Source: Phallusia mammillata (taxonomy: Eukaryota). Taken from it: a DNA stretch of 64,000 nucleotides. The stretch's first letter is position 1. Each line of letters begins with the position of its first letter. The position numbers and the translations under genes are program-made. Shown here one piece after another: positions 713 through 45,229 of the stretch. The stretch lies in contig OZ281494.1 in the NCBI GenBank assembly GCA_965637545.1, positions 6,572,001-6,636,000 of the forward strand, in the 5' to 3' direction. Under the pieces are notes generated by a model. That model did no database searches. It was given only the letters and a program-made list of their open reading frames with translations, and was not told the DNA's origin.

Positions 713-1349
713 CTTGAGTTTGAGTTGTAGTGTTGCTGGGTGGGGTGTCGCAATCAAATATTTGGTATGACATCACAGTCAATGAATGATAAAACACAGT
801 TGTTAAATTTGGTGGCCAAGAAAAAAACAGTTTGTATGCTTTCCCCACATAAGTTATTTTTGTTAAGAACATCTTTGCATAATTCCTTGTCAAAACCTGT
901 TTTCATGTAGACGCGACGCCAAAGACTGTTGGACGCCGAATACTTTCCTTCCATTACAACAAAAATGTAGTTAAATATTTTAACCAAAAGCAAACCACTT
1001 ACCTGGTTGACCAGGCAACCAAAAGTTGAACTCTGAATTTAAGTCGAAAACGACACTTTCCAGAACTTTGAAAAGCAGCAAGCGATTTGGACTGTTGTAG
1101 TGAGTGTCATTTAGCTGCCAGACACACTTGCTCACTTTATTTTTGCCATACCCCGTGCTGTGAACCAGAATGCCTGAACTATCGGAATTAGGGAAAGGAA
1201 TGCAAACGCTTGCTGCCAGCAAAATCAAACCTAGAAAAAAAAAATTTGTCGTTTAGTTTATAATTATATCAAAGTACTGTTTATGTGATAAAGATCTTGT
1301 ATAACTTACCGGCAAATCCTGTCATTAAATGCAGTTTCGTTGTCGACAT
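713..1349 (-). pseudogene. X1: WPP/CUB-like receptor family member, frameshifted; signal and domain exons only, 3' part unresolved toward the window start
   Basis: Exon 1 (1349-1310) MSTTKLHLMTGFA|gtaag; exon 2 (1230-1003) GLILLAASVC..FWLPGQP; exon 3 aligns to X2 only if one base is removed from the A7 run at 821-827. The acceptor aligned to the paralog AG reads GG, with an in-frame AG 3 nt downstream. Confidence 0.8.
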
Positions 1350-2808
1350 ATTTCACCACACGAACACGTATTTTATGCTCGTTACTAATCTAACTAATAC
1401 CGACAATAAGCTCGCATAATCGATAACCTACTACGTGACATATTGCAGGTTTATTCGCCGCATTCTGCTATTGGTTCGCAAGTTAAACGTGTCAACCATA
1501 ATTCATATGCATAAAAGAGGAAGGACAGTGATTCAAGATATTTTGAACTAATCTACATTTGTTTGACCTTTCTTCGATTAAAATCTTATTTTACGGCTAA
1601 TTCAGTCCAATAAAGTCATTTCATCCATATTTTATTTTTGATTCATATTTTTATTTTGGAGAGTAGATCGTTGCGTAAAACAACACAGGAATGTTACTGA
1701 ATAGAAAAAATAATTCAGAGGACTAGCAACAATGTAAATTCTTTGTTCGCTTGGAATTGTTTTATTGTTTCTTTACTCGTACTTTTTTCTGTTGTATAAA
1801 ACACGTATCGGGAAAGATAGTGGTCAAAAAGCAAATAATAAAATTCGAAGTTACATGTTAGGTACGGCTGCAGTAAATGAACACAACAAAACCTGATTGC
1901 AGACCTAGGAATTTCGAAAGCTGACAAAACAATGCAAAACGTCGGGATTAGAAAACGTGATCAAGTATGAGCCCAATTGTCGTTGGACTTCACACAAAGT
2001 CATATCATAATCTAGTGACAACATAATCTTAGTAAAAAAACAGTAAGACAAAGTAAAGAACTTAACACAAAATTTAATACACGTGTTTTACTAAGTTACA
2101 TAGTAGAAGTACTAATCAAAATGAACAGCAAAAGCTGAACCCAAGTCCAGCATTTTTGCACGCAGAAAAATATACAGCGGCATAATTGGTTTTCTTCTTA
2201 ATTAACCGGAGGTTTAATTATCCATGGTTTACAAACTGAAAGATCTCAGATCTAGCCTTAAATGTAACTTACACCTGAGTGTTTGATATAAAGGTTTAAG
2301 GTTGTCTGGAAGGTACATTTAATTGAATTTGCCTTCAATCACTAAAATTACCAACAAACATTCATTTGCTTTTCTGAATTCACGCGTTGTAATAAAACTC
2401 CGAACAATCAGCAGCAGGTTGTTGGTTTGGAGCTAGATATTCTACAATCTCAGCTTGTGGAACGACACCGATGCTCGCGTAATCTGCAATACAGAAGTGT
2501 TAAATAAATATTACGTGACAAACGTCCACAACGATATTGTTACGTGTCGTGTAAAAATTGACAAATTTGTTGTAATGAAAAAGTGCCTTGTGACAAATAG
2601 AGGATATTTTGGTCATTTTTACAATGACATTTTTCTTCATGTTGGTTTGTTATTTTCTTGGAATCAAATTTAAATATGTCATCTATTGTTAATTGCAAAT
2701 GCATGAAAATAATGTGTATACGGATTGGAGTAGTAGGCATTCCATGTCCCCAATAACGGCGATTGGACAAAATGTTACCCAATAATCTTAGTTCCATGCA
2801 AATTTTAC

Positions 2809-4771
2809 TTATTGGCCTAGATGCGCCACTGAGCATAAATTACAGTCAAAAAAACTAATGCGTAAACTAAATAAGATCCTCACCGTGTTGTAAGTTGGAA
2901 GACTTTGTCACGTGTTCAGCCGAAGAAGTAGGCTGATGCTTTTCTTGTAGCTTGTCTTGATTTGAGAACTGCACTGTTGCAGCGGTCCTAAACACATTAG
3001 TATGCATTTGCAAACTTGTTATATATACGTGTTTGGATGTGTAAACGGATTGGTAATGTTAAATAAAAAACATGTCAGTGGTTTCACAACTGTCGTGGTC
3101 GTTGGTAGAACAATTTCAAGTACATGCCAATCGCTTTACCAACACACATACATGTATACAATACAAATGTATACAATAAAGGAACATTTGAAACATTTAG
3201 CAAATAGTTGTAAATATCAATAAGGAACCTCATCATATGGTTATGACGACGTTTTTGCAGCAAAGAAATGATGAGCAGTAGGCAGAATATCACCAGAACA
3301 ATAGTCGCAGTTACAATAGCGATCATTTCAGTCAGTGAAAAAGCTGGAAAAAAAGGTAAGTTATAATAATGGTAAATTAAATTTTTGCTTGGCACACCAA
3401 AACACTGTAGGAAAACATAAATCCAACTTCTAAACTCAGTTATTGATATGTTTAGATCTTTCGAATCGTATGTTGCAAATCTATGGGAAATAGTTTTCAT
3501 CCAAAAAATAACATTTGTATACTAGTATCAAGAATATATAATTGATCAATGTAAACATGTAGCATAAAAAATGGTTTGATTTTCAATATCTACCTTTTAG
3601 CAATCCTTTAGATGTTGTTTCTATCACAGTTCGGTTAATTATACCGACCGGTGATATCATTGCAAAATTGGATGACTGTGAAGATGAAGGGTAGATGATA
3701 GAGGAATCGATTTGTAAAATTGAAGAACTTGTGGCTATTGTCGTCAATTGTGTTTTCACTTTTGCTGTTGTTGTGGTTCTTGCTGTTGTTGTTGATGTTG
3801 TTGTATCTTTCGACTTATTTGTACGTAAAATGAGTGGAGTCTTCATCGTCGTTGCTTTTGTTGCTGTTGTCTCTTTCGGTTTGTTTGTGTTAAAAATCGC
3901 TGATGTTGTGGTCGTTTTGGTTGTTGCAATTTTTGTCAACTTCTTTTCCGCATGCACTGCATTCGCAGATATTAAAGATAAATAACGACAAACAAATTAG
4001 TTGGTTTTAGGTAACTTAGGTAACGAAGACCTAATTTAATCTATTAAATTTCATACTGATAATATTAATAGTTTGCAAAGCGATTCAAAAATGTTAAATG
4101 TATTTTATGTGGTTACCTTTAGATCGAGTTGCATTGTTCTCAAATTTTGTGGAACAGTCAAATATTTGGTATGACATCACAGCAAAAGAGTGATAAAACA
4201 CAGTTGTTAGAGTTGGTGGCCAAGTAAATAATGTTTTCATATTTTTCCCGCACAAATTATTTTTGTTGAGGATATCTGTGCATAGCTCTTTGTTGGAACC
4301 AGATTTCAAGTAGGCGCGGCACAAATGACTGTTAGACGCCGAATACTTTTTAGCTATTAGAGCAACAAAATAGTTATTTTTGAGTATTGTGAAACAAAAC
4401 AATCCTTGCTTACCTTGCTCATCCGGCAACCAAAACTGGAACTCAGATTTTAAACTGAAAACGACAGTTTCAATAACTTTGAAAACCATCAAGCGGTTTG
4501 AACTGTTGTGGTGCGTGTCATTGAGCTGCCAGACACACTTGCTCACTGCGTTTTTGCCATACCCTGTGCTGTGAACCAGGATGCCTGATGTTTCGGAATT
4601 AGGAAGAGGAATGCAAACACTCGCTGCCAATGAAAATAAGCCTGAAACAAAAAATGGTTGGGATGCATTGTTTTATGTCGATCAGATTATAGTAATGTCA
4701 ACCTACTAAATTATGAACTGATATTGCTTACCGGCAAATCCTGTCACTAAAATCAGTTTTATTGCCAACAT
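2809..4771 (-). CDS. X2: single-pass receptor, CUB-like WPP domain + Thr-rich mucin stalk + TM; apparently intact, last exon uncertain
   Basis: ATG 4771 MLAIKLILVTGFA|; domain exons lie within ORF 4094-4630; Thr-rich exon ORF 3583-3957; TM exon AFSLTEMIAIVTATIVLVIFCLLLIISLLQKRR; cytoplasmic exon 2987-2884 in matching phase 2. Confidence 0.8.
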
Positions 4772-6118: not shown

Positions 6119-7384
6119 ATGTCTTCTCGTTATGTACACGTGTTTCTGGCAGTTGGACTGGCCAGTAAGTCGCGTTTATTTTAAGATGCTTTTAGTAAGG
6201 CTAATCTTACTGGATATGCACTTCTTAAATATTGACAAATATTTTCTGTTTTTACAGCTTCGTTGGGTTTGACAGCAAGCTATTGCCTTCATCTGCCAAT
6301 TCCAAACACTTCAGGTTATTTGGCTCACAGTACAGCGGTGTGAGTGGAAGTTTAACGATTCTCTTCAAGCCAACAGTGGATGTCGTATGATAATTTTCAA
6401 AGTTTTGGAAACTGCGTTTTTCGATCTTAAATCTAAGTTTATATTTAGATTGCCCGACAAACCAGGTAAAGGTTACAGCGTTTTTTCAGTGATCGTTGTA
6501 TAATGCATTGAAACTATATCTGTATGTGTAAGATGTTGATGCCTCATGTTCAAGGAGTGGATGGTGTCGGATTTACGTCAAAGTCGGTTCAGATATGACT
6601 CAATGCAAACGCTTGATAAGTGAAACAAACTTGTGCAATGATGGCATCAAAACTTCATTGATGTGGCCACCTGTTATCACCACAAGATTTTACAAGAGTT
6701 CAGCGGTGATGTCATATCAGTTTGTAGACTGTGACTCCAGTTCAATGTCAGGTACTGCTGTGTGTTTGGAACACAATATAGCTTAAAATTAGTCTGGTTA
6801 AAATTACAGGCATTTCTTCTACAGAAACCCCGACAGACCAAACTTCGACCCAATCGTCAGCACGATGTGATAGGCCTAATAATTTTGAAGGTAATCCAAC
6901 ACAACAACGCAGTAAATAAGTCATTGCTTCATGTAAAATGTCTCTTTTATTTGCAATCGAGAGTAGTTTAAGGTTGGATTCGGCAATGTACCGGCCGCAA
7001 ATTAAAATGAACTTTACAAAACCAGCACTAACTTGTTTTGTTGTTCTTTAGAGCCTTCCACGTGTTCATGCTCATCAATTCTACTGGGGCTGGTCGTGGT
7101 TATTTCCATTTTACTTTCAATTGCTGGGACAGGATTGCTGTTCATGGTTTTCAAATCTAGGTGAAACCGAAGAAAAAAAGATGTATTTTGCGGTTATGAG
7201 ATATTTCCTTTATTTCAGACGATTACAAAAGCCACAGAGAAGTTTCAATGAAGTCTACAGCATCGCCGATACGTTGCCAGCTATTTCTAATGGAGTCAGA
7301 ACAGGCGAAATCAAAGTTATTTACGTACCCGCCGATCCATCAACTGATAACAAAGTTGTTTATAATGATTTGTACAAGTTGTGA
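6119..7384 (+). pseudogene. X3: WPP-family receptor with C-terminal ITIM, frameshifted in exon 2
   Basis: Exon 1 MSSRYVHVFLAVGLA|gtaag. Exon 2 has only 7 nt (vs 30 in X8) between HS and CEW, which shifts the frame. The WPP exon, stalk exon, TM exon (ILLGLVVVISILLSIAGTGLLFMVF) and tail ending KVVYNDLYKL* are otherwise open. Confidence 0.85.
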
Positions 7385-7968: not shown

Positions 7969-8625
7969 ATGTTGCTACTGTTTCTATTTCCTCCACTAAT
8001 TTCAGGTTTGTAGAGTTAAAGGTTTGTTTTTCAAGACGTAAGCTTAGAAAATAAAAAGTCCATGCGTAATGCCGTTTGTAAAAGTATAGCATGCTATACT
8101 TATTATGCACAATAAGTCTGCAATTGCAAAAAGTACAATAAAATTTGAAGTTTGTGATAATGTCATGTGTAAATGATTTGTATAAGCATAAGACTCTGCT
8201 GATACCATACTCAAATAAACATACATTTGGTCTGTGTGTGTAGCAATAATTTCTGCAGACAATTTATCAATCACAGTATTTGGTTCTAATGGCCTATGGG
8301 ATCGTAAACTTATCCAAGGACCATTTTAAGCAATAAAACATGAACCCAAATCTTTATTATTCAGCAACTTGCTGTTTGTTCTTGTATAAATCCTATGTTC
8401 ACATTGCAGTGTTCTGTATCAGCTATGCGGAAGGAACAAACTGCACGATTGTTGAAGATACCTTTAACGGAACAACAAGGTATATCTACATCGGCGCTGA
8501 CAGCTTGGAAACTTGCGAATGGATTTTTAATGGCACATACCGCACAGACGTTGTCTTTGCATTGACGCTTTTCGAACATGAAGCACTGAACGGACAGCAA
8601 GGAGAAGTGTTTACTTTGCCAAGTG
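7969..8625 (+). pseudogene. X4: divergent family member truncated after the first domain exon
   Basis: Exon 1 MLLLFLFPPLIS|gt; exon 2 VFCISYAEGTNC...CEW...FTLPS|gtgag. The WPP exon present in paralog X9 (20409-20722) is missing because about 780 bp are absent near 9030. Confidence 0.75.
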
Positions 8626-9743
8626 GTGAGTTTGGCTGTTTAAAATTTGAATTGTGGTTTGTATTGAAAGCGTCAAATCAAACAAGACGTTTTCAAGTAG
8701 GCACGCTGTTGTCAATGATAACGGAACTTAACTTGTATTTCAGCAAAATATTGTTGCAGTTAAATAGTTTTGAAATATGTTTGTAAAAAATGATTTTTTG
8801 TCACATCAACTCGTCATCAATACAAAACGTAATATGCTGCTTTAGGCGCGTTACAGTAAATTATTATCTGACAGACGAGCTGAGTGTAATCTATAATTAC
8901 ATTTTTGTGGTGTGGTGTGTTTCATTGCATGTGTTTTACATCGTTTTTAGAAGTTTTCAAAGGACGGTAAAGTATCAATACTAAAATTACATTTGTCAGA
9001 AGAACTTTACAAAACGGCGGTAACAGTTAAATTACAAGAACTGCAAATGTACACTGTAGTTGTCTTTATTTGATCCGTTGCCAAAAAATATGTCAAGTAC
9101 TTTCCTGTCAATACAAGTAATTGTCATGGTAACAGTTAAACTCTCACGACATTCAATTTTATAATACCCGTTTCAGGAAAAAAATCAAACATCACGAGAC
9201 AAATTGTACTGTGTGTTTTAAATTGTGTTTAACGTCTGCACTAAACGTTTACTCGCATGCTTTCCTGCGTAGTACTGTACAATAAACTATTTGCATTTGT
9301 GGTCCATACTTTGGTACAGAAAAGAGAAACAAAAACAAATATAGTAGTTGGCTTAGCATTATTAGATTAAAATAGTTGGCTTAGCATTATTAGATTAAAG
9401 ATGAACTTGACATTTACAACATAAACAATGCACGTCTATTTACACGTAAACGTGACGTCAGGACGTCAGGAACCTTCTGCGCTGTTATGTGTGTGAGGAA
9501 CTTGCTGTAACAAATTACGGGAAGTGATACTGAACCATGAAACAGATTTTCAATAATCGGGCCTGCAAGCGTCAAGTCTATTATGAGTTTTCCGAACTAT
9601 CGTTATGTTGTAATAAACAACGAAAACCACGTGCAATAGTAAGGGTAAGGGGAGAGTATGAACATATATGTTCAGCCATGCGCAAGTTATTGTCACATGT
9701 TGTGCTTACGCAAACCGTTTCCGCAAAAACATCCCAAGTTAAA

Positions 9744-12283
9744 CCAACACACATGCATGTATACAATACAAATGTATACAATAAAGGAACATTTGAAACA
9801 TTTAGTAAATAGTTGTAAATATCAATAAGGAATCTCATCATATGGTTATGACGACGTTTTTGCAGCAAAGAAATGGTGAGCAGTAGGCAGAATATCACCA
9901 GAACAATAGTCGCAGTTACAATAGCGATCATTTCAGTCAGTGAAAAAGCTGGAAAAAAAGGTAAGTTATAATAATGGTAAATTAAATTTTTGCTTGGCAC
10001 ACCAAAACACTGTAGGAAAACATAAATCCAACTTCTAAACTCAGTTATTGATATGTTTAGATCTTTCGAATCGTATGTTGCAAATCTATGGGAAATAGTT
10101 TTCATCCAAAAAATAACATTTGTATACTAGTATCAAGAATATATAATTGATCAATGTAAACATGTAGCATAAAATAATGGGTTGATTTTCAATATCTACC
10201 TTTTAGCAATCCTTTAGATGTTGTTTCTATCACAGTTCGGTTAATTATACCAACCGGTGAAGTCATTGCAAAATTGGATGACTGTGAAGATGAAGGGTAG
10301 GTGATAGAGCAGGGGTGGGCAACATACGGCCCGCGACGGGATTTTGAGCGGCCCGCGGACAGTTTTCGGTCTTACATGATAATGTGGCCCGCGGCCACAG
10401 TCTGCCGCAACCCCCATTACTTGCTTACTACGTCAAATTACAGTTGTAACGCTCCCCAATAGCAAGTTTTCCCGCCGTTGTTACCATTGCACCATACGTC
10501 CATTGTTACGACATAACTACCAACCTTGTGTGTGTCCTACTTTAACGGTTTTCTTTGTTTTCACACGTATAGCCTAGTTCAGTGGTTCCCAACCATTTTA
10601 TGTCGCGACCCAAATACTTCTCAAAATTTGGTTTTGTGGATTATTGCGAACCATAAACATATATTCTTACTATTTCTTACTATTACGAATAATATTCGTT
10701 TATTTTTAACCAACTTAGAGCTGGCTCAAAGCATTATCAGCCAGACAACGCTTAACAGTGATCTCACACAAACATTATAACGTCACAATCAGAATTAACC
10801 ACTACCACGCCAAATTGTCATGAAATGATTATTGGGCAACAATTTATAGCCTTGGGGAAATAATAAAAAAAAATAAAAAAAAAATATAGCAAAACGACCA
10901 TTCTGTAAGTCAAAATGTTTGAACATCACTGCCCTTGGCCTGGGAAATAGTCTATGCGGCCTACACGAGTGTCGATAAATCGTTTGGTAGCTTTTATAAA
11001 CAAAAAGGTTCCCCACCCCTGCTTTAGGTGGTCAAAAATCCGTTTTAAATCACGGGATAAATACGCGATGTATGTATCGATTCAGGAATCCGGCCCGCCA
11101 AGTACTTCATTTTCCCATATCAGGCCCGCCGACTGGAGAAGTTGCCCGCCCCTGTGATAGAGGAATCGATTTGTAAAATTGAAGAACTTGTGGCTATTGT
11201 CGTCGATTGTGTTTTCACTTTTGCTGTTGTTGTGGTTGTTGCTGTTGTTGTTGATGTTGTTGTATCTTTCGACTTGTTTGTACGTAAAATGAGTGGAGTC
11301 TTCGTCGTCGTTGCTTTTGTTGCTATTGTCTCTTTCGGTTTGTTTGTGTTAAAAATCAATGATGTTGTGGTCGTTTCGGTTGTTGCAATTTTTGTCAACT
11401 TCTTTTCCGCATGCACTGCAATTGCAGTTATTAAAGATAAATAACGATAAACAAATTAGTTGGTTTCAGGTAACTTCAATAATATCGGCACGCAATGCTT
11501 TCGTTGAAGACCAAATTTAATCTAGTAAATTTCACCCTGATAATATGAATAGTTTGCAAAGCGATTCAAAAATGTTAAATGTATTTTATGTGGTTACCTT
11601 TAAATCGAGTGGCGTTGTTCTCCAATTTTGTGGAACAGTCAAAAATTTGGTATGACATCACAATAAAAGAGTGATAAAACACAGTTGTTAAAGTTGGTGG
11701 CCAAGTAGACAATGTTTTCATATTTTTCCCGCATAAATTATTTTTAGTGAGAACATCTATGCATAGCTCGTTTTTGGAACCAGATTTTGAGTAGGCGCGG
11801 CACCAACGACTGTTAGACGCCGAGAACTTTTTAGCTATTAGACTTAGAGCAACAAAACAGTTATTTTTGAGTATTGTGAAACAAAACAATCCTTGCTTAC
11901 ATTGCTCTTCCGGCAACCAAAACTTAAACTCAGATTTCAAACTGAAAACGACCGTTTCAAGAACTTTGAAAACCATCAAGCGGTTTGATCTGTTGTTGTG
12001 TTGAGTGTCATTAAGCTGCCAGACACACTTGCTCACTGCATGTCTGCCATACCCGGTGCTGTGAACCAAAATGCCTGAAGAATCGGAATTAGGAAGAGAA
12101 ATGCAAACGCTTGCTACCAATGAAAACAAGCCTGAAAAAATCAATCGCTGGGATGCATTCAGACTATTGTTTTGTCAAAGTACTATTGTTTATTAAAGTA
12201 CTTATTTTACTATTGTCCATAGAGTAGTAATTAGATTACTTACCGGCACATCCTGTTACAAAAAGAAGTTTCTTTGCCGACAT
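9744..12283 (-). pseudogene. X5: recent paralog of X2, disrupted by a hAT MITE in the Thr-rich exon and cut off after the TM exon by the duplication junction
   Basis: ATG 12283 MSAKKLLFVTGCA|; domain ORF 11575-12144; MITE at 10310-11154 gives SSITGAGNFSSRRA*; the cytoplasmic exons seen in X2 are absent. Confidence 0.85.
10310..11154. mobile_element. hAT (Charlie-like) non-autonomous element / MITE, 845 bp
   Basis: TIRs CAGGGGTGGGCAAC / GTTGCCCGCCCCTG (13/14); perfect 8-bp TSD TGATAGAG at 10302-10309 and 11155-11162; single TGATAGAG at the empty site in X2 (about 3696). A second hAT-type end, CAGTGGTTCCCAAC, is nested at 10580. Confidence 0.95.
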
Positions 12284-13066: not shown

Positions 13067-13234
13067 TAAAAACCTATGCTACACCTAATCTGTGCGATGC
13101 CACAACTGCGCATACTGTTTCCGACTCTTTTCTGACATTTTTATCGCACATATGTTTTTTTCTGACTCATTTTTTTAACTTATGTGTGGCATATAAACTT
13201 GAACTACCTGAACTGTTGTTACTTTGCTTTATAA

Positions 13235-13569
13235 ATGTCTTCTCGTTATGTACACGTGTTTCTGGCTGTTGGACTGGCCAGTAAGTCGCGTTTATTTCAA
13301 GATGATTTTAGTAAGGCTCTTACTGAATATGCACTTCTTAAATATTGACAAATATTTTGTGTTTTTACAGCTTCGTTGGGTTTGGCAGCAAGTCATTGCC
13401 TTCATCTGCCAATTTCCAACACTACAGGCAACCTATAAAAGTACAGCGGTGTGTGTGGAACTTTCTCTTCAACCTAGCAGTGGATGTCGTGTGATGATTT
13501 TTAAATTGTTGGAAACTGTGTTTTGTGGTCATAAATGTACGTTTATATTTGGTTTGCCCTGCGAGCCAG
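13235..13569 (+). pseudogene. X6: 5' fragment of a family member (paralog of the X3 5' end)
   Basis: Same exon 1 as X3 (MSSRYVHVFLAVGLA). Exon 2 has an in-frame TAA, shares the agtacagcggtgtg deletion with X3, and no WPP exon follows. Confidence 0.8.
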
Positions 13570-14131
13570 GTAAGATTTCAGGCTTTTTTTAGTGATCGTT
13601 TTGTAATGTATTGAAAGTCAAGTTTTTATGTGATGTTTTGTTATTTGTATCAGTTACTTTTTATAGTTTTCTGTTTTGCATGTTTTCGATTTGCTTTTTT
13701 TCCTTTTTTTGCTGTGTTGTTATTATTATGTTAAAATTATCGCTTGTAAAATGAAGCACTATTTGTGGTAGCCTGATTTTCCGATTGTGCGTACCTCGTT
13801 TGATCATAATTCTATTGCCAAATCGAGAAAAAAAAACATCAATGTGAAAAAAACATGTAAACTATCATTAGAATAATTACAGAGTAGAAATATATATCCT
13901 AATGTATAAGATAATAAGATGAAAAAATTAGAATTAATTACTCATCGGAATTCACAAAGAGGGAAATTGTTATATTGGCTGTGGAAAAATAATTGACTCT
14001 AGGAATAGTTATTAGTGTTTAAATTTAGTTGAAATCTTGCAACATTTAAAACAATAGGTGGGCGTTAGCTTATAAAAGAAACTGGCTCAACGATTGTTTG
14101 TAAGTTGCATTGGCTGAGCTTTGCTTTCAAC

Positions 14132-16578
14132 ATGCTGCAGTTTCCATTTGAATGTCTTTTTGTGACCCTAAAAATTGTAGGGCTTTGTCTAACGTCAATA
14201 ATAACCAGTGAGTAGAGGTTTTAAATACTTCAACATGAAACTTGTTTATGACGGCTAATTTGTGTTTTCGTAGCTTCGTTGGCTCTGAAACAGGGTTTCT
14301 GCCTACCTCTGCAAAGCTGCGACTCTTCAGGCTATTTGGTTCAAAGCACAGGTCGTAACTTTCCTGTCACTGGCAAATGTGTATATCAGTTTAATGAATC
14401 TCAACAAACAAGCAGAGAAAATGTTATGATGGTTTTCAAAGTGTTGGATGTTGGATTCTTTAATCAGAAATCTCAGTTTATTCTCCAGTTGCCTGATCAA
14501 CCAAGTAAAGTTACATTGTTTGGTTGTTACGGTGTAAGTTTTAACTGTGACTCTATTTTAGATGTAAAGTACTCATGTCCAAGAAGTGGTTGGTGCCAGA
14601 GCTATGTTAAACCTAATTCAAATGCGAATGAATGTAAACGATTGCTAGATGAAGCAAAATTGTGTGCTGATGACATTAGAGCTTCAGTTATGTGGCCGCC
14701 TGTTATCACCACTACATTTTATTTGAGTACATCAGTGATGTCATATCAATTTGTTGACTGCAATAACAACACAACGAGAATTACAAGCAAAGGTGAACGT
14801 TTTGTAAACATACGAGGCTTAACACAAAAACCGATGTATCAACCGTTTGTGACATAAGTGATTTAAATTAGCTTTCTTCTACAGATAAGTCATGGAACCC
14901 CACAACAAAACCTAGCATTTACAATGACAACCAACATACTGTTAAAGGTATTTTTGGTCGGATCCAAATATACTGACATTTCTTCTGACACTACCTGTAA
15001 CTTTATCCCACGTTTTGCCAATATTTTTTTGCCACCTACTCTGATATTATTTAATGAGGTAGTCACAAACATAAATATTTTGTTGATCGTTATTGTTTTA
15101 CACAGCAGGTATTACAAGTAACCCATCTACAACAACGACAACAGAAGATATTACAACATCGCGTAGTAAAACCACAGCTGATGCGGAATTCACTACAACG
15201 TCACCGAATAAAATTACATCACAGGTTAAAATGATAGAAGGTGGGTTAAGAAAAAAAATAACATTTATTTGTCTATTTTGACATAAATTAGATACTTCTT
15301 TGTCTCTTACGTGAAGTCGTGGCAAACTACCAATTCAAAAATTAGACTGTAGCATAGTTGAAGGTTTGTAAAATAATCATTCTCCCTTACAGATTTATTA
15401 TTCGATATTGTTTCTCTTTCCTCCCTTCACACGACTGACAACGTAATGTAATAATTTTGTTTCTACGTTGGTCTTGTTTGTTTTCTATGCTTTCCGGAAT
15501 GCTTCATTTGATGAAAAAAATCCCCCTGCAGATTCTTTATTAGTGAAGAACTCCCCTTACGTTAGTGCAATAACACAACGATAACGTTTGAGGCAAAAAT
15601 GATTTCGATTTTCGTGGTTTTGTATTATTGCAGACAGTCCACGGAACCCAACAAATAAAGCTGATCACATTCACAATGGCAAACTATATATTGTTAAAGG
15701 TATTTTTACTTGTGACATAAGAACTGGTGTGTTTCAAGATACCAATAACCTGATGAGGGCGTCTCGTATGGCTGTTTATAACAAAAGCGTTGGAACAGCT
15801 TATACATTATAGCCTAGGTGGCAACAAATATATGATTCATCTAAAATAATCCACAGCTTTTGTAATTGTAGAGACTACATGATTAGCATACGCCCTTAAT
15901 AAACCAAACAACAATGCATATGGTTTGATTCAATTTACATATTCTTTATCAAGTAGCAGATTTCAGTATTATATTTACTCAATGCTTTGATGATATTTCA
16001 GGCTTTTCCGTGACTGATATGATCGCCATAGCAACAGCGACAGTTGTGTTGGCGATTTTTTGTGTGCTTATCGTCGTCGCGTTGTGTCTTAAGCAGCGAA
16101 ATTACAAAAGGTAAAGCGTGTCAGTATTTCGATGCTTTTCTTTTTAAGTCACCGCTACTTTTATTGTCCAAAAATATTATTCCCAAAGCACTGTTTTTCC
16201 AATAATTTGTTGGAATGCATTGAAATACTATCTAGTAAATGTTTGTTGTTTAAAATTGTATACATGCACTTTGATCAAGCGTTCAATTCACACATAGAAA
16301 CATCAATTCAGACCAATACCAAGAACAAAATTATCAATCAAGAAGTTTGCGTGCTGCTTCTGAAATAGTGATTGAAGACCATTTCATTTCTCCGCCACCT
16401 ATGTCACACCACGGTAAACAAATTTGTAAAACCTGTTTGTCACGTTGAGTAATAAAACCTTTTTGTAGACTATGGCAGTTTGGACGTTGCAGCAGAACAA
16501 GACAACGATGATTATCTTGCCCCAATCCGACAACCAATTCCCGAATACATGGATTTTAATGAACCCAATCGGAATTAA
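14132..16578 (+). CDS. X7: apparently intact WPP-family receptor with multi-exon stalk and Tyr-motif tail
   Basis: MLQFPFECLFVTLKIVGLCLTSIIT|; domain exons 14274-14504 and 14562-about 14792; several phase-1 stalk exons; TM GFSVTDMIAIATATVVLAIFCVLIVVALCL; tail ending DYGSLDVAAEQDNDDYLAPIRQPIPEYMDFNEPNRN*. Confidence 0.85.
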
Positions 16579-17270
16579 AATAATCTGAGTCAACGTATTT
16601 TTTGTAATGTTTGTGATGCTATCCGGAAATTTTTTTTTATATTTGTGTACATTTTATGGTGTGATTGTTTACTTTGATTTTTTTTTCTTCTTCTTAGTTC
16701 CAAACCCCTTTTTCGATGTTGAAACATTTTGTTTTTATCATACTAAGTGTTAGCCTTTTGATTAACCAGCTTTTAAAAAAGCACTAATCTTTCTCGAATA
16801 TGCGTACCTGATTTAATCCTAATTCGTTCACAATATTCCAAAAATAAAACATCACTAAGACAAAATAATGTAGAGAATATTAAGAAAACAAGAAAGAATA
16901 TCCAGGATATGAGAATAGGTACTTGTGACATATTTGCATTGCGAGCGGAAAGCCGATTTTACATATTTTCAACGAAACGGCGTCCAGACTTACTATCACC
17001 ACCGCTATCAGATAATTAATTAAACGTTTCCAAATTACCGTCAGTGTACTTAGTTTGTAAATCTTATTAGGGTAATTTTATGCCATGACCTATGAATTTG
17101 AAGTTCAGCGAAAGAATGCTTTGACACTTACTTTGCGGTATAAAACTCAAGCGATAAATTTACTTTAAATAGTTTGTTGTAGCCGAAAATAATCACCGAT
17201 GTGCGCTCGTGACTCTACGGCATTGTTTGGGTTTAAGAGTCACATGGACAAACATTTTGCGTTTTTGCAG

Positions 17271-25082: not shown

Positions 25083-25554
25083 TGTTATGTCATGTTTGCG
25101 TTAGTACTTTACTGCGTTTTGTAATTGATGAGGTTGGAAAAGAAGTAGGTTGTTAACAAAATCTATACGCAAAATCTTTATGTAACAGTCCAACTAAAGC
25201 GTTTAAACTAAACCTATTTATTTTTTATCCTACAGACGACATTATCAAAAAGTATAGTAAAATATTTTTTCTGTGCCTTGTGTTGGTGGTTGCACTGCTT
25301 ATTCTGTGTATTGTGTTCCTCGTCACAACTAACGTGGAGCTAAGGTACGTGTTTACCACAGTAGATTGTTTATTACCTTAGATTTGAATACTCGAAAATA
25401 TCTAAACCAAAAATTGATTGATAGCTGTAATGCTGTCATAGCAAAGACCACTATCAATAAGTTTATGTGTTAGTGTTGCAGAAGGTCACGACAATAGTTG
25501 AAGATTTATTTGTGTCAAAATATAAATTACTACATCCTTTGAACTTCGACCCAT

Positions 25555-27117: not shown

Positions 27118-29643
27118 ATGTGCAACAGTTTGCTGATCTCGATAATACTATGTATAGTTTTGGGTAAGTTCTTTGAATTTTGCCCAGGAAATATCAATAT
27201 ATATATATATGTTACTTAACATAAAGCAAAGTAGCCTACTAGAAGCTTATGAATTGTCATTTCAGTATAGTTTATACATGTCTAATGCTACAATTTATGG
27301 TTCGCAAACTTACCTCTGGATAAATGTGTTTCTTGTATTTCTTAAGCTGATTCCAGTGATGAATTAGAAAAGCGACACGATTACATTACTTGGGAAAATC
27401 AAGATGAAACGATCTGGACATTTAAACACAACTTGTCGGAAAATATGCTTTCATTGCTAATTATCAGAGCTAATAACGTCAAAATTTTGCTTCCTGGTGG
27501 TAATAGTTAGTATTTTGTGGTAGTAAATAAATACAATGTTTCTAAAAAACAAAAAAAAAACGCAAAATTTTAACGTGGGCTAATTTACGATCAAGTAGTA
27601 ATAAATCTGTTTTAGTTTAATTTATGTTGAAAATTACATAACAGGTGTTTGGCACTTGACTCAATAAGGTTTAAACATTCGGTAACAACTGACTTGAATC
27701 CGTTTCGATTATATCAGAAAAAAAAGTAGGAATTTCAAAGACTACAAAAAACATTTTATTCTTCAATATAACATTGTTACAAAAAAATAGGACGCAAAGA
27801 TGAAAAGTTAACGTTTTTGTGTTTAATAAGTTCATTTAATGAAGGTATCTATTGCACCTAACTACAATTAAGTTATAAAACTCGGGTTCGGGTCTGGTTA
27901 CGGATTTTAAAATTGGGCCTTCTGACAACTTTCGGTTTGAGCTCATGTTAAAACAGAAAACAAATGAACAGGAAATCGCTGAGTAAACAATCGTGATCAT
28001 GTTAAGAGCTTACACGGGCTTTACTGCGGGTTATGTAAACGTTGTTCTTGTTTTACCAAGCTGTGACAAAACTAATAAATCATGTTTCTTTAAGGCAGGA
28101 GCTACACGTCTAATATTGATGGAACAGATTACTGGTGTGGAGTTTTTGTTTATCCCAACAATTCTGGTGCAGGATCTTGTCGCGCAAATGTCACTTATTC
28201 CGATGTTTGCGAAAATCCTTCGACGGCTAGTTTGCCATGGCCTCCACAACTTGAAGTTCAAAAAATTAAGCTATATAGGCCATCTACCATACTATATAGC
28301 TATGCTTGGTTGAATTGCAAAGAAAAGGCTAATCCACCTAAAGCTTCAACAGCAGCTGCCGTTACGACGCCTGTAGAAGGTATGGAGTCAAGCAATTCAC
28401 GTAACTTATATTTTTAAGACCTCACATCGTTTTTGCTGCAGAACATAAAACTACACAATCAGATACAACTGTTCCTAGCTTTTCCACGCAAACATCCAGA
28501 ACATCAAAACCCCAATCGCAAGGTGGTTTTACAAACACAGGTTGGTCACAAACTACGTTATCTGTAGGAATAAATACCTGATTTAAAAATGAGCCTACAG
28601 TTATGTTTGTTATCCAATGCCTTGTTTATCTGCCTTTACCCCTTTGCGGTACTTGTTTTGTTGGTATAGGCTATTGTGCGATCGTGCGATAAAAATGCAA
28701 AGTATCGTTTAAATCAGATCAGATTTGATTGAATAAATATAGTTGAATTGGGCGGCTCTGGAGTTACTCAAAACACTGATCGTGGTCAGTTACAATAATT
28801 GACATAAATATTAAATGTGTTTGTAGACTTTGTTACGCCGAGTACCAGCACAGAAGACACAGTGATAAGTGATGAAAAGCTAACTAAAAATGGGATTACA
28901 ACAATAATTCTGGCAGTTGCTTTGGTGATAAGTCTTGCAGCACTGGGAATGACCTCAATCTATCTGTACAGGTGAATCATATCTGTAAATATCAATCGAT
29001 TAAAACACAGATCACAATCTCCAAACGTAAGCAAACATAAAAAAGTATTAAAATACATTTGGCAAACAGCAGCGCAAATCAATCAAATGTTTTATTTGCT
29101 CACATATTAACATAAGGATTATCACATCAGACATTTTTTTCTCAGCACTGCTGCTTAATTCAAGTGTTTTTTTTTCCTTTTCAATCAAGTTTAAACCCAG
29201 CGTGGATAGTTTGGATGTGTCTGTATGGTTTAAGCCCCTTTTAAGTTTTGGTGCAAAGTCCTTTCTCTGTTTACTGTCAAAACATTTTCTTCTTTCTGAC
29301 TTATGACTGTATAAGATATGTATTTGCCACATAAGTATGTCAAACGGGAGGAGTAAAATGTGAACAAAACATTTTTTGCCCTGTGCTATTAAATACTTAA
29401 ACAACCTAATTTCTCGTCCGTACAATCTCCACAAACTTATCGTCTTAAATTTAACAGTTGGTATTTTCATTCAGATTTTGTAAAGAGGAGAGATCCAATC
29501 TAAGTAGTAAAGATCACAAGCAAGTGATCACTAATGATTGTAAACAACACCAAGAAAAAGAGAGCGCTTGTTCAGCAGGAGAAATGGTCAACAACGTATT
29601 GTACGATTCATACCAGGGTTCAACTGATATCTCTAATTACTAA
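27118..29643 (+). CDS. X11: apparently intact divergent WPP-family receptor
   Basis: MCNSLLISIILCIVL|gtaag; exon ending KILLPG|; exon YWCGVF..SC..VC..LPWPPQL..YSYAWLNC; stalk exons; TM ITTIILAVALVISLAALGMTSIYLY; tail ending EMVNNVLYDSYQGSTDISNY*. Confidence 0.8.
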
Positions 29644-40437: not shown

Positions 40438-42306
40438 ATGGAAGTAAAGTTATGTTTGGTGCTGATTTTAACAGGTAAGTGATACTTTTCAGCAAAAATA
40501 AATGACAAGAGACTTTTCAAATGCTATCTTTATCCTAGAATACGGTGATTAAAACGGCTTGCTGTTTTCAAAGGCATAAGTAGCGTTATTTTACGCTACT
40601 GTAATACTTCTAAGTTAATGTTGACAAAAAAATTATAAAAACTATATACGTTGAACGAAAAACACTTAAATCAGTGTACTATGCACAAATAGAAAATGAT
40701 TCCAGGTGCAAACGAGTTTTATGTATAACATTTTGTATTTTTAGGCTTTACTTTTCCGCTCGCTGTGCTTTCAACCAGCAAGTGCGGTCAGTATTTTAAA
40801 GGCAACTGGCTTGGTATTCTTCATATGGTTGGTACAAACGAATCAAGTTGTAAGTTGACCCTTGTGCCATCCGTTGGTAACCTCACTGGGATAGCAATGC
40901 AGATTATGCAGCTGAAGACGACCAACCCAACATCTCAAAGTACATTTGTAATGCCAGATAAGAACAAGCTACTCAGTCAGCCTGTAGATTTTTACAACGC
41001 TCCCAAGCAGCAGTGCATGATATTCACACAACCCGGGGCAACGCTTTGTTCTAATGCGGACTTTAACGAAACATGTAATACGCCGATTATCACAACGGCA
41101 AGTCAGTGGACACCAGTGGTCGAAACCCAACTCTTTGACGCCACGATTATTGTGTCATACACGTTCCTAAAATGCCAGAGAATTCCGGTTACTCCAACAA
41201 CGACAACCGCTACTAAAGAGGCAGGTATGATATGGAGTCATTCAAAATATCGAAACAAATAACCGCATTCTTAATCAAAATACCTTTCAAAAGCACGATA
41301 TGTAGTGCATTTTGCCTCTGTTTGCTGCAAGTAATGTGAGGCTATGTTAATAATACCTAAAGTAAACAGGTGATAAGGTTGAACATAAATCTTGATACCA
41401 ATACATAATGTTTAGAAAATGTCTTCTGTTTTTTTTTAGACAAAGTGTGGCCATCTCACACAAAGTTTCGTTTAAATCAGAATCTTTACGCAATTTATCA
41501 TGGTTAATGTTTGGTGTTTTTCATTTTTAGCTTCTGGAATTGGTCTTTCCCTTGCAAACGTCATCCTAATTGCAACATCCATGTTCTTGATTTTGCAGGC
41601 ATTGATCTGTGTAGCATTTGTTAGGTTAGATTTTAATTCTTTATTTAGAGTAACTGCTCTGATTTTAATTTAGTTAATGCATTTCCAGTTATTGCTTCCA
41701 AATCAAGAGAAAAAATAGTCGACCATCAATTACAGGTAATAATAGCTTTTGTGTGTAAAATTCATGTCGCTTTACCAAAAAGTTTCCTATGTTTTTAATA
41801 TTTTTTTGGGCAGGGTCGAAAACTTTTCATAAAACGAGCCAAATTTCCTACATTAACTGTACCGAACAACCAGGTAAGTTATTTTCTATAAAATACGTAC
41901 AGTTTGAATCGTTTAGGTCAAGTGAGAAATATAAACTTGTTAGGTATGTACATATATGTGGTCAAATGTTAAGGAAACGTAACTTAATTGTTAATTTTAA
42001 CTAACATAATTGAAATCTTTGATAGGTTTTGATGGAAGCCTTCCTAAATCGGATGTGGATGTGGATGGATATTTAAACTCAATAAGTAACTTATTTTACG
42101 TCATTTTATAAATTCCACGAGTAAATGTCCATCTGCTTTCAGGGACCGGAACTGGCACGCAAAAAAACGGAAGTTACGTCAGTGGACCCCTACGTCAACA
42201 ACAGAATCAGTCATGTTTATTTGAACTAAATGTTGCATCCAAACAATACCACATGTGCCAAATGAGCCTTGGTTTAAGTCATTTTCGGGGGCAAAAGCCG
42301 CTATAA
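40438..42306 (+). CDS. X12: divergent family member with the whole ectodomain in one exon; exact C-terminus uncertain
   Basis: MEVKLCLVLILT|gtaag; single exon with C..GIL..C..MPD..C..C..C..QWTPVV..VSYTFLKC; TM LANVILIATSMFLILQALICVAFV; tail exons ISYINC and DGYLNSI. Confidence 0.75.
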
Positions 42307-42705: not shown

Positions 42706-43213
42706 GTGTACAGGTTACATAAACGAAACAAGATCAAAAATGAAAATAAAACTTAATGTGATGGGCAGATCGCTGTAATAAACAACCCAAAAGAATGTTT
42801 ATATTTAGCACGGTTGTACTCGGGGCATGTCCCATATTTACAAGCTTTGTTCAAGTAATCATATGTGAACAAAAACATATCTTTAAAATTGTGTCTGTTT
42901 TATGCAAATGTTGTATTTTATTCGAATATTTATCTCCTAAATCAAATTATCGCGAAATTCATGTTCAAGTCCATAGATAAGAAGTTTGAAAATCCCAGTT
43001 TTAAAAAATTCTCGCCTGGTTTTACCACTTTCTAAATCGTGATACGTAAACCTGATGTCATACAACTTACACATAGCTTGATTAGTTTTCTGCGATTTAA
43101 GTACTTCCGTATGTTGACACTTAATTACTCAAGACCATATTTACATATAATTGCTTTCACCGCACAAGTTTCGCTGTATTAGTTTATCAGTGTTTGAAAA
43201 ATAAAAGGAGAAC

Positions 43214-45229
43214 ATGAAGACTTTGTTACTGCTAAGCATAGGTAAGATTTGCTTGATAAAAATATTTACAGATTATATTCAGTCAATCATAGAGTAAAAG
43301 CTCATGTGTTGAAAATACCTAGTTTTTGGTTGTTAAGGAAAAGTCGTTTATCTTTTTAGCAAAAAAGGGGGAAAGCGACAACTTAAAAAGTAATATAGCA
43401 GAATACAATGTACACACGTCGATTACAAACGTTACGGTCTGCAATGCACCCCTTTTGCTCGACAGTTGGTTGTTTGTGGATATCATTTTTGTTTTTGTAA
43501 AAACAGCTTGCTTGTTATTAAGTGTCTTATGATGTCTAGACCGTTCGATTTTCTTACTGTTCGTTGCCACACTTGTATATTCACAGTCTTTGCTACGACG
43601 AAGTTGATCCGGTGCACAATTGCACAGCTTGCTTGAGGCAGGAATTTTTTGGAACTTTGTATCATGGAAGCAATCAAACCACACCGGAAGACTGTAGCAC
43701 AACCTTTGTTGCAGTAGCACAACGCACGGACCTTGTGGTTGTGTTCAATATTCTGCAAGCCAACTGTCCGTCCCGACATGAATCTACGATTGGAGTTACA
43801 CTTTGTCAAACGGTAGAAGCAATTCTTTGTTGTTATTATAAGGTTATTTAACTTTAAACAGAAAGCGGCTGACTAATAACTTGATCGCATTGAAACCGTT
43901 AGCTGCAGGTTTTTCAAGTGTTGTTGGTGCCAACATTAAAAGGCAGTTCATCTCACAGTAATTACTCTACAATGTTTTTGTAGATTAAAACTTATTTGTA
44001 CGTTATGTTTTGTATGTTACATCTTTTGAGCACATAATTCACTATCCAAATAGGGTCAGAATTGTATGAGTAATATCTATAGTGCTATCGGTTTTATCTT
44101 TTCTAACGTATATTTAATACTGTTGTTTTCTTGTCAAGACATGATGTTTGATTTCGCTGATGGCACCGTCTCAAATATGTTACAACCTTGATGTTTAGCA
44201 TTTGTAAGTCCCGCCTCAACCACTCATTCTGGATGCAAAGAATATGTTGAGCTGCAAAACTTTTGTGGAGGGACAGCTATGACTCATATGAGTGTGAAAT
44301 GGCCGCCAGTGTTTTCGAGTCATGCTGCGAAGTATGCTATACTTATTCAGTTTAAGGTTATAAAATGCCCTACACAGTTTTCGATTCCGAAAATTCCCAC
44401 ACGAGTACCAGGTAACGCCAAAAAAAAAACGCTACAGCAAAAGTTTTTGTTTAGTTTGAGCAAAGTTGTAATGAAACATCACGTGTAAACATGGCTTTTC
44501 TTTTGATTATTAGTGCTTACCACCACCACTACGGCCCTATCCAGTGCTGCAATCACCAACTCAACCGTGTCTACATATGCAATAACAACTCCGAAACTCC
44601 TTGGTATTTTGCTGAGAGCAATCTTCTTCATTTTCTTAACAGAGATTATTATCTTTTTACTCTGCAACAGGTAAGTATAAACTATAAACCCAGTCAATAA
44701 AGTAAGCGTAACATTTCTTGTAAACCCATGCTGAAAATGAGCAATATACGTCCAGATAATAATCTTTCGTACACTTGCCATTGCCAAACGGTGATGGGAT
44801 TCAAACCCACAACAATTAAATCATTAATTCATTTTTTTTGTTTCAGCCCCAATAATAAAATAATAGCAGTGTACATGTGTTTTTAAGCCTGGAAATAAAG
44901 GCATTTAGTAGACACTAACGTTAAGTAACGCTCCGCATAACAGTCCAGACCATGTGCACATTTGTACAGGTTGTGTGTACTATTGTCGCCCGCGCATACT
45001 TGGACGTTTATGGTTTCAGGAAGACTGCACAAATTATAAATATTTTTTACTATCATAAACGGATTGAAAAAGCTACCAAAACGTTGGAGGAGGATTTATC
45101 TTCAGGTAAGGGGTTTCATCCTTTGTTTCAGTAATATTTACTATTCTGATAACATTTCATGCAAAGGTAATTCAGTCAACGATAACGAACAACCAGTTCC
45201 AGTATTGGACAATTATATTTCCCCGATAC
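43214..45229 (+). pseudogene. X13: family member with TGA at the conserved Trp of the WC motif; TM carries Arg and Glu
   Basis: MKTLLLLSI|gtaag; QP*CLAFV..GC..FC..KWPPVF with TGA at 44189-44191; TM exon 44514-44670; tail VLDNYISPI. The exon 1 to exon 2 phase is also unresolved. Confidence 0.7.

What the first reader, a model, noticed from the sequence alone, without database searches (positions are those of the whole stretch)
713..45229. Tandem array of 13 copies of an unassigned, fast-evolving Cys-rich 'WPP' receptor family
Seen: 13 loci on both strands share signal exon - ~150 aa domain - Thr/Ser stalk - TM - Tyr-bearing tail. They keep Cys spacing, an SG-x-L start, C-x-W, an LP exon end, WC, WPP/WPS/WTP and a terminal SY-x-F-x-x-C, yet distant members share little else. 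Only X2, X7, X11 and X12 look intact. Inference: the first half follows CUB-domain strand order but the second half has extra Cys pairs, so this may be an undescribed CUB-derived recognition domain. Birth-and-death turnover like this is typical of immune, allorecognition or gamete-recognition receptor clusters.
Basis: partly seen in the sequence, partly recalled or inferred. Interest (0 to 1): 0.9.

Follow-up and report, generated by a model that had tools for sequence, protein, structure and literature searches.

The report
Sea-squirt array of CUB-like surface receptors
This sea squirt carries a row of 13 related genes, most of them broken, for cell-surface proteins whose outer part is an altered version of a known binding module (the CUB domain); the family seems confined to sea squirts, I found no paper on it, and its job is untested.

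Summary
A profile built only from other species' sequences finds 12 window ORF pieces; shuffled controls find none. About four copies look intact (X2, X7, X11, X12); the rest are frameshifted, truncated or interrupted.

The ectodomain is best read as a divergent CUB domain. Evidence:
- the N-terminal half keeps CUB-like motifs;
- an AlphaFold model (pLDDT 83) has CUB domains as its nine best PDB matches, at a modest Z of 6.5-7.2;
- protein-language-model neighbours are mainly CUB clusters.

Pfam and PDB sequence profiles do not match, so membership by sequence is not met.

Relatives are few. Named ones come only from the ascidians Clavelina and Ciona, where they are also in tandem arrays. One tail motif, N-x-x-Y-x-x-hydrophobic, is shared across genera.

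The immune, allorecognition or gamete reading has no support. dN/dS is 0.27-0.42, X7 has one synonymous variant in its domain exons across two DNA runs, and two small RNA data sets showed nothing.

Earlier notes of this scan describe the same array continuing upstream of this window.

The parts
708..1252 (-). X1: domain only, pseudogene. There is a frameshift inside the C-terminal half and the conserved WC has become WR. The downstream exons lie beyond the window start.
   Evidence: 77% DNA identity to X2 and X5
2392..4771 (-). X2: probably intact.
- Signal exon 4771-4732
- N-half exon 4641-4414
- 60-nt in-frame intron
- C-half exon 4353-4117
- Thr-rich stalk about 3956-3594
- TM exon from 3343 (TM helix 3326-3258)
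- Last exon 2483-2392, carrying DYASI...EYLAP
The splice donor after the TM exon is uncertain. The conserved WC reads LC.
6236..6783 (+). X3: pseudogene. Frameshift inside the N-terminal half; the C-terminal half ORF (6532-6783) is intact.
   Evidence: paralogous block with X8
8340..8783 (+). X4: signal and N-terminal half in one ORF. The C-terminal half was lost by a deletion of roughly 740 bp relative to X9.
9743..12174 (-). X5: domain ORF intact (12111-11614). The stalk exon is interrupted by about 850 bp (10309-11155). The 3' part, 9743-10309, is 98% identical to X2 3138-3703.
13349..13589 (+). X6: fragment of the N-terminal half only. It is 85% identical in DNA to the X3 5' region.
14132..16578 (+). 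X7: intact 7-exon model, 334 aa.
- Signal 14132-14207
- N-half 14274-14504
- C-half 14562-14792
- Stalk 15109-15240
- TM 16002-16110
- Tail exons 16298-16413 and 16469-16578, with DYGSL...DDYLAPI...EYMDF
All sites are GT-AG. The ectodomain exons are phase 1-1.
17261..17772 (+). X8: pseudogene. The N-terminal half is truncated after RMMIF; the C-terminal half ORF is intact.
19665..20755 (+). X9: N-terminal half frameshifted (19764-19945). C-terminal half exon at 20432-20632, separated by a longer intron.
22575..25378 (+). X10: probably degenerate.
- N-half 22684-22842
- C-half 23333-23494, with WPS and the terminal Cys displaced
- Stalk 23629-23952
- TM 25262-25330
27118..29643 (+). X11: feasible intact 6-exon model.
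- N-half 27347-27505, lacking both N-terminal Cys
- C-half in ORF 28094-28414
- Stalk 28442-28540
- TM 28827-28971
- Tail ending GEMVNNVLYDSY
40696..41259 (+). X12: domain intact in one exon (40780-41190), with no intron between the halves and WTP in place of WPP. A possible 10-nt first coding exon lies at 40696-40705. The downstream TM and tail were not resolved.
43618..45229 (+). X13: degenerate.
- N-half 43618-43767, which lacks the LPDG end
- C-half 44192-44380
- Thr-rich piece 44507-44671
- Tail motif DNYISPIR at 45208-45229

Best explanation
The array is an ascidian-restricted family of type I membrane glycoproteins.

Each intact gene encodes, in order:
- a signal peptide;
- one ectodomain of about 145 aa, carried on two phase-1 exons;
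- a Thr/Ser-rich stalk, presumably O-glycosylated;
- one transmembrane helix;
- a short cytoplasmic tail with Tyr motifs.

The ectodomain is most likely a derived CUB domain.
- It keeps the first disulfide (CG...C-x-W) and the aromatic-CG of the last CUB cysteine (WCG).
- It has lost the third CUB cysteine.
- It has gained an insert of about 30 residues with its own Cys pair, then WPP and a terminal Cys.

Inferred mechanism, not shown:
- The CUB-like head binds an extracellular protein or glycan ligand.
- The stalk holds the head away from the membrane.
- The tail motifs recruit PTB or SH2 adaptors or the endocytic machinery. These motifs are N-x-x-Y-x-x-hydrophobic in X11, Clavelina and Ciona, and YxxL/I plus Y-[LI]-[AS]-P in X2, X7 and X13.

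Shown: the array grows and decays by tandem and block duplication, patchy gene conversion, replacement of tails, and frequent pseudogenisation.
For: - Family and architecture.
- Relatives: only 13 hits at E<=0.001 in 1.84 billion representatives, two of them (P0006, P0012) looking like low-complexity repeat proteins rather than relatives (my reading). The named ones are Clavelina lepadiformis and Ciona intestinalis proteins with the same layout; the rest are unnamed ORFs on metagenome contigs that I take for ascidian host DNA.
- Tandem arrays elsewhere: five same-strand copies in Clavelina L008 and three in L001, with an intron at the same place after LP-x-G.
- Fold: the model of P0001:24-168 has pLDDT 83 and pTM 0.78. 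The nine best of 48,161 PDB chains are all CUB domains (Gpr126, TSG-6, neuropilins, cubilin, enteropeptidase, C1s), at Z 7.2-6.5, rmsd 2.5-3.5 A, 88-98 residues aligned. About 20 of the top 36 are CUB.
- Protein-language-model features: 40 of 60 neighbours of P0001 are CUB clusters, top score 0.91. X12 gives 0.89 and X7 0.81.
- UniRef names the homologue CAK8680512 'CUB domain-containing protein'.
- Purifying selection on the domain: X2 against X5 gives dN/dS 0.27 at dS 0.25.
- Tail motif [ED][ML][IV]xN[VE][LI]Yxx[YFI]: present in X11, all four complete L008 Clavelina copies, P0008 and Ciona P0013.
Against: - No Pfam family, CUB included, matches any of about 50 member sequences, even at E 10.
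- Family profiles find no PDB sequence of a CUB protein.
- Foldseek has no hit at E<1e-3.
- VIA Z of about 7 is within the range the tool calls common for unmatched models. GOLD, cupin, nucleoplasmin and P-domain jelly rolls score only about 1 Z unit lower.
- ESM Atlas structure matches are generic.
- No RNA evidence in this species: two small RNA contig sets cover none of the X5-X7 exons.
- Ligand, glycosylation, disulfide map and tail function are all inferred.
Confidence: 0.7

Rival explanations
1. The ectodomain is not CUB-derived. It would be an independent or otherwise related jelly-roll beta-sandwich (GOLD-, MAM-, cupin- or nucleoplasmin-like) that merely resembles CUB.
For:
- Foldseek top hits are cupin, Kex2 P-domain and GOLD.
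- Pfam CUB models do not match.
Against: - With the deeper alignment the top nine PDB matches are all CUB, and they carry the highest sequence identities, 12-17%.
- Three members independently have CUB clusters as nearest language-model neighbours.
- CG...G...C-x-W...L-x-[IF], then [DE]...LP-D-G, then aromatic-CG, follow the order of the CUB consensus motifs (read from the alignments).
Confidence: 0.17
2. One reading: the cluster encodes polymorphic self/non-self receptors (immune, allorecognition or gamete recognition) under diversifying selection.
For: - Tandem expansion with many pseudogenes, and deep divergence between members, about 20-25% identity.
- Membrane topology with Tyr tails.
- An earlier first-reader note of this scan reports variable loops in copies upstream of this window (unchecked).
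Against: - dN/dS is 0.27-0.42 in all pairs tested.
- X2-X5 replacements are spread evenly rather than clustered (my reading of the alignment).
- In two DNA runs the X7 coding sequence shows one synonymous change (14485) and one stalk replacement (15115), while its introns and near flank show about 7-8 variants.
- Some members group with other species' sequences.
- The two DNA runs come from one study and may include the assembled individual, so this evidence is weak.
Confidence: 0.12
3. In this species the array is mostly or wholly a decaying relic, and none of the copies is a working gene.
For: - About 9 of 13 copies are broken.
- X2 has lost the conserved Trp of WC.
- X11 lacks the N-terminal Cys pair.
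- No RNA contigs were seen on X5-X7.
Against: - X7 keeps a complete 7-exon reading frame with consensus splice sites and all conserved residues.
- dN/dS is well below 1 between copies.
- X11 keeps the cross-species tail motif.
- The RNA sets laid were tiny, 22-34 million letters of contigs.
Confidence: 0.12
4. The proteins are structural, mucin-type surface glycoproteins (an anti-adhesive or protective coat) rather than ligand-binding signalling receptors.
For: - Long Thr-rich stalks, for example about 120 aa in X2.
- The ectodomain is small and single.
Against: A folded Cys-stabilised head under purifying selection, together with a tail motif conserved across genera, argues for specific binding and intracellular coupling.
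Confidence: 0.1

Closest known systems
CUB domain (Pfam PF00431; as in C1s/MASP, neuropilins, cubilin, TSG-6, Gpr126)
   Same: - Beta-sandwich of similar size; best structural matches at Z 6.5-7.2.
- CG start, C-x-W second Cys and aromatic-CG.
- Encoded by two exons with phase-1 borders. That this is typical of CUB modules is from my own knowledge.
   Different: - No Pfam or PDB sequence match.
- The third CUB Cys is lost.
- An insert of about 30 residues with its own Cys pair (a short helix in the X7 model) follows the WCG.
- WPP motif, and a new terminal Cys after SY-x-F-x-x.
- The last CUB strand (GF-x-x-Y) has no clear counterpart.
CDCP1 (Trask) and DCBLD1/2 (ESDN): vertebrate single-pass receptors with CUB-type ectodomains and Tyr-rich tails
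   Same: - Type I topology.
- CUB-like ectodomain that standard profiles recognise poorly.
- Cytoplasmic Tyr motifs, including YxxP-type sites, that dock SH2 proteins. This comparison rests on my own knowledge.
- CDCP1-type CUB clusters are among the language-model neighbours.
   Different: - One CUB-like domain only, on a mucin stalk.
- No LCCL or discoidin domains.
- No detectable sequence homology.
- Multigene tandem arrays restricted to ascidians.
Uncharacterised ascidian proteins: Clavelina lepadiformis LOC143461689, LOC143461630 and LOC143462528; Ciona intestinalis LOC101243407
   Same: Same family. They share the domain motifs, the intron position, the stalk-TM-tail layout and the tandem arrangement, and some share the NxxY tail.
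   Different: At most 36% identical to any window copy. The X1-X9 clade of the window is a separate local expansion with another tail type.
Botryllus fuhc-region genes (fester, uncle fester, BHF) and Ciona s/v-Themis
   Same: Ascidian surface-protein genes, in part clustered, that are invoked in self/non-self recognition (my own knowledge; see PMC12065747 and PMC9265791 in the list).
   Different: Different domains (sushi, EGF/Ig, PKD/REJ, fibrinogen-like). No homology was found, and no polymorphism comparable to those loci was seen here.

Membership tests
CUB domain (PF00431 / PROSITE PS01180) | Significant match to the curated sequence profile | tested here: not met
   Pfam scans of 7, 7 and 36 member sequences at E up to 1-10 gave no CUB, CUB_2, CDCP1_CUB or CUB_animal hit. 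PROSITE could not be run. UniRef's automatic name for CAK8680512, 'CUB domain-containing protein', suggests some profile does hit that homologue.
CUB domain (PF00431 / PROSITE PS01180) | Jelly-roll beta-sandwich of about 110 residues with CUB strand order | tested here: inconclusive
   The AF2 model (pLDDT 83) has CUB domains as its nine best PDB matches, at Z 7.2-6.5, rmsd 2.5-3.5 A and 88-98 residues aligned. Z is below 8, Foldseek E is above 1e-3, and other jelly rolls are close.
CUB domain (PF00431 / PROSITE PS01180) | Four conserved Cys forming the C1-C2 and C3-C4 disulfides | tested here: not met
   C1 (CG) and C2 (C-x-W) are present in most copies and are lost together in X11. C3 is absent in all. 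C4 is kept as WCG. Three further Cys are added. Pairings were not determined.
CUB domain (PF00431 / PROSITE PS01180) | Module encoded by two exons with phase-1 borders | tested here: met
   The X7 exons are 231 + 231 nt and the X2 exons 228 + 237 nt, all phase 1. The same split occurs in Clavelina and in L001. That this is typical of CUB is from my own knowledge.
Ascidian 'WCG...WPP' receptor family (defined here) | W-C-x-x-Y...C...C...W-P-P...[SY]-[YF]-x-[FVI]-x-x-C second half, after a CG...C-x-W...LP-x-G first half | tested here: met
   A profile built from non-window members finds 12 window ORF pieces at E<1e-2, nine at E<1e-11, and none in shuffled controls.
Polymorphic allorecognition or gamete-recognition receptor loci | Excess non-synonymous change or high allelic diversity in the binding domain | tested here: not met
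   dN/dS is 0.27-0.42 between paralogues. There is one synonymous variant in the X7 domain exons in two DNA runs. The sample is very small and possibly not independent.
Polymorphic allorecognition or gamete-recognition receptor loci | Expression in blood cells, the colony or tunic edge, or gametes | not testable with these tools
   Only small RNA contig sets were available. They laid nothing on the X5-X7 exons.

The most novel reading that the evidence does not exclude
The arrays could be an ascidian-specific recognition receptor system of a new type. A remodelled CUB head with an extra disulfide-stapled insert would diversify by duplication and tail swapping. It would be coupled through a conserved NxxY/YxxΦ tail to engulfment-type (PTB) or SH2 signalling, and used for microbe, self/non-self or gamete recognition. 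This would be an invertebrate-chordate counterpart to multigene immune receptor clusters, built on a fold not used that way in vertebrates.
Probability: 0.12. Interest if true: 0.75.

Novelty: new variant of a known kind. Interest (0 to 1): 0.45.

Why it matters
The family shows a common extracellular binding module remodelled enough to escape standard sequence annotation. It has lost one cysteine and gained an extra disulfide loop and new signature motifs. It has also expanded into tandem arrays in the closest invertebrate relatives of vertebrates.

It gives ascidian biologists a defined, unannotated family of surface receptors. Working copies, pseudogenes, a cross-genus tail motif and a Ciona member all make it open to genetic testing.

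It also warns annotators: short in-frame introns can make two exons read as one ORF and add spurious residues, including cysteines, to a predicted domain.

Without expression, ligand or polymorphism data, its biological importance remains open.

Tried and rejected
- Pfam scans of window ORFs, of homologues and of all 36 alignment rows gave nothing relevant.
- PDB sequence searches with whole-domain and N-half profiles gave no CUB. The only hits were spurious: a designed Kelch-like repeat protein and others.
- Two word-based protein searches recovered essentially only the Clavelina query P0001, plus one short unnamed fragment in the second search. In the first, low-complexity stalk words swamped the search. 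In both, the family is too divergent for shared 5-mers.
- Foldseek against PDB and the ESM Atlas structure search gave only generic jelly rolls.
- The first structure model, of X7, included the 19 residues encoded by the in-frame intron. That stretch had pLDDT below 50, and the model gave a less specific match list. I treat the second model as the better one.
- RNA evidence: the candidate RNA runs held next to none of the stretch. Of the two laid, only high-copy repeats at 11100-11154 and 12945-13000 were covered.
- Rfam gathering scan of the whole window: nothing.
- A guess that ORFs at 30.5 kb and 33.5 kb were pentraxin-like was not supported by Pfam and was dropped.
- Literature searches for the family, for the LOC identifiers and for CUB expansions in tunicates found no description.
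- The species was not identified. No database protein is more than 36% identical to a window copy.
Full report
**What the window is.**
The window is AT-rich (GC about 36%), has no N runs and gives no Rfam match at gathering level. Earlier notes of this scan call the genome a sea squirt and place further copies of the same array upstream of the window start.

**The observation.**
- tblastn and an HMM seeded from the three longest ORFs found related pieces at thirteen places on both strands. Wider profiles confirmed them.
- A profile built only from the 22 non-window sequences finds 12 window ORF pieces at E<1e-2, nine of them at E<1e-11. Five residue-shuffled versions of the six-frame pieces give no hit below 0.01.
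- The family is therefore real and the count of 13 is right.

**Gene structure.**
- For X7, a splice-aware model joins seven exons with GT-AG sites into a 334-aa protein. In order they are: signal (14132-14207), N-terminal half (14274-14504), C-terminal half (14562-14792), Thr-rich stalk (15109-15240), TM (16002-16110) and two tail exons (16298-16413, 16469-16578).
- The two ectodomain exons and the stalk exon are phase 1-1.
- X2 has the same plan. Its exons lie at 4771-4732, 4641-4414 and 4353-4117, followed by a stalk exon that may run to about 120 aa, a TM exon and a last exon at 2483-2392. The donor after the TM exon is unclear.
- X11 can be joined into a 6-exon gene, 27118-29643.
- X12 has the whole domain in one exon with no internal intron.

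**The short in-frame intron.**
- In X2, X5 and X7 the domain reads as a single ORF of 178-192 aa only because the intron between the halves is 60, 66 and 57 nt long, in frame and free of stops. It is bounded by GTAAG-type donors and pyrimidine-rich AG acceptors.
- Clavelina and the other foreign loci have a longer intron at the same position, after LP-x-G. Other X7 introns are 55 and 66 nt.
- All three copies of this clade with an intact domain ORF keep it in frame, while the broken X1, X3 and X8 do not. That is unexplained and could mean it is sometimes retained.

**State of the copies.**
- X2, X7 and X12 have intact domain ORFs, and X11 has a feasible whole-gene model.
- X5 also has an intact domain, but its stalk exon is split by about 850 bp (10309-11155). 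Its 3' part, 9743-10309, is 98% identical to X2 3138-3703, while the rest is about 86% identical. That marks a recent conversion or patch duplication.
- X1, X3 and X9 carry frameshifts inside domain exons.
- X4 lacks the C-terminal half, X6 is a fragment and X8 is truncated. X10 and X13 look degenerate.
- The block holding X3+X4 (6090-9748) is a copy of the block holding X8+X9 (about 17437-21813), at 82-88% identity with a 98% identical patch.

**Relatives.**
- An exhaustive HMMER search of 1.84 billion representative proteins found only 13 hits at E<=0.001. Two of them (P0006, P0012) look like low-complexity repeat proteins rather than relatives, on my reading.
- The named ones are Clavelina lepadiformis proteins of 286-360 aa and one Ciona intestinalis protein. 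All are 'uncharacterized', except that UniRef auto-names one Clavelina entry 'CUB domain-containing protein'.
- The rest are unnamed ORFs on metagenome contigs that contain introns. I take these for ascidian host DNA, but that is inferred.
- No relative is more than 36% identical to a window copy.
- Clavelina has five same-strand copies within 22 kb, and one metagenome contig has three.
- A tree of the C-terminal half is short and weakly supported. It puts X2, X5, X3, X8, X7 and X9 in one local clade, X12 with the Ciona protein, and X11 with a foreign ORF. The array thus appears to mix old lineages with a recent local burst.

**What the domain is.**
- Sequence profiles fail. There is no Pfam hit for about 50 members, and no PDB hit for family profiles.
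- A first AlphaFold model of X7 (pLDDT 75.6, with the in-frame intron translated and disordered) gave only generic jelly-roll matches.
- A second model, of Clavelina P0001 residues 24-168 with a 36-row alignment, reached pLDDT 83 and pTM 0.78.
- Foldseek still had no hit at E<1e-3.
- An all-against-all alignment to 48,161 PDB chains ranked CUB domains first to ninth: Gpr126, TSG-6, neuropilin-1 and -2, cubilin, enteropeptidase and C1s. Values were Z 7.2-6.5, rmsd 2.5-3.5 A and 88-98 residues aligned. About 20 of the top 36 were CUB.
- Z near 7 is not decisive by the tool's own calibration.
- Protein-language-model neighbours are CUB clusters for all three members tried: 0.91 with 40 of 60 hits for P0001, 0.89 for X12 and 0.81 for X7.
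- Read against the CUB consensus (my own knowledge), the order CG...G...C-x-W-x-[IF]...L-x-[IF], then D/E...LP-D-G, then aromatic-CG, is kept.
- The third Cys is gone. After WCG comes an insert with two Cys, which forms a helix in the X7 model, followed by WPP, a long strand and a terminal Cys.
- I conclude at about 80% that this is a remodelled CUB domain. Sequence-profile membership was tested and not met.

**Tails.**
- X11 ends GEMVNNVLYDSY.
- The four complete Clavelina copies in L008 end ...[ED][ML][IV]-x-NVLYQ-[PQ]-[IFY]. P0008 has EMISNVLYRQF and the Ciona protein EMVYNEIYNQY.
- This N-x-x-Y-x-x-hydrophobic motif, kept across genera, resembles PTB-binding and tyrosine-sorting signals. 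That comparison rests on my own knowledge and its function is untested.
- X2, X7 and X13 instead share DY[GA]S[LI] and/or [DEN]-x-Y-[LI]-[AS]-P.
- So tails have been exchanged within the family. This agrees with an earlier first-reader note on the neighbouring window.

**Selection, variation and expression.**
- Nei-Gojobori dN/dS values are 0.27 for the X2-X5 domain (dS 0.25), 0.32 for X7-X2, and 0.33-0.42 among the C-terminal halves of X3, X7 and X8. This is purifying or relaxed selection, not diversifying selection.
- Two DNA runs from one study cover 11100-17100 completely and differ from the window at about 7 and 18 sites.
- The X7 coding sequence has one synonymous site (14485) and one stalk replacement (15115), against about 7-8 variants in its introns and near flank (codon positions worked out).
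- Those runs may include the assembled individual, so this is weak evidence.
- Two small RNA contig sets cover none of the exons and touch only two very high-copy repeats.
- The immune, allorecognition or gamete idea is therefore neither supported nor excluded.

**Literature.**
Full-text searches for the family, for its LOC identifiers and for CUB expansions in tunicates found no description.

**Verdict.**
- The CUB-derived reading is supported at fold and motif level. The recognition-receptor role remains a hypothesis.
- This is a new variant of a known kind of domain, in an ascidian-restricted receptor-like family that turns over by duplication and decay.
- It is of moderate interest until expression, ligand or population data exist.

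Noticed in passing
window 12958-13006 (-), within the repeat at 12945-13000: A weak type III hammerhead match (Rfam RF00008): 23.9 bits, E 0.06, below the gathering score of 48.5, with the CUGAUGAG...CGAAAC core. It lies in an element of extreme copy number (word depth about 1.6e5 in DNA runs) that is also present in RNA contigs. This fits the separate first-reader note on a minimal hammerhead and suggests a ribozyme-bearing repeat family.
   Followed up: partly
window 11100-11154: A second very high-copy repeat (word depth about 9e4), also seen in RNA contigs. It ends exactly where the X5 stalk exon is interrupted (11155). It is not similar to the 12945-13000 repeat.
   Followed up: partly
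window 4354-4413, 11790-11855 (approximate), 14505-14561: The introns between the two domain halves of X2, X5 and X7 are 60, 66 and 57 nt long, all multiples of three and free of stops. In the broken X1, X3 and X8 they are out of frame. This could be chance or could reflect intron retention ('exitron').
   Followed up: partly
window 9033-10309: A mosaic of two recent copies: 9033-9748 is 98% identical to 21106-21813 (downstream of X9), and the abutting 9743-10309 is 98% identical to X2 3138-3703. This indicates a recent rearrangement or gene conversion inside the array.
   Followed up: partly
window 46328-46625 / 52664-52954, 48672-49011 / 59236-59579; TM pieces at 47353-47439 (-) and 57864-58175 (-): Downstream of the array, another gene pair shares duplicated segments (78-88% identity) and similar TM exons followed by RRR. 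This is the region another note calls a receptor tyrosine phosphatase with a C-type lectin ectodomain. I did not examine it.
   Followed up: no
L008 (Clavelina lepadiformis CAUIVY010000128.1, 5984278-6006101): Five tandem same-strand family members lie within 22 kb. Four have complete stalk-TM-tail parts ending in NVLYQ. The adjacent gene carries a weak fibronectin type II hit.
   Followed up: partly
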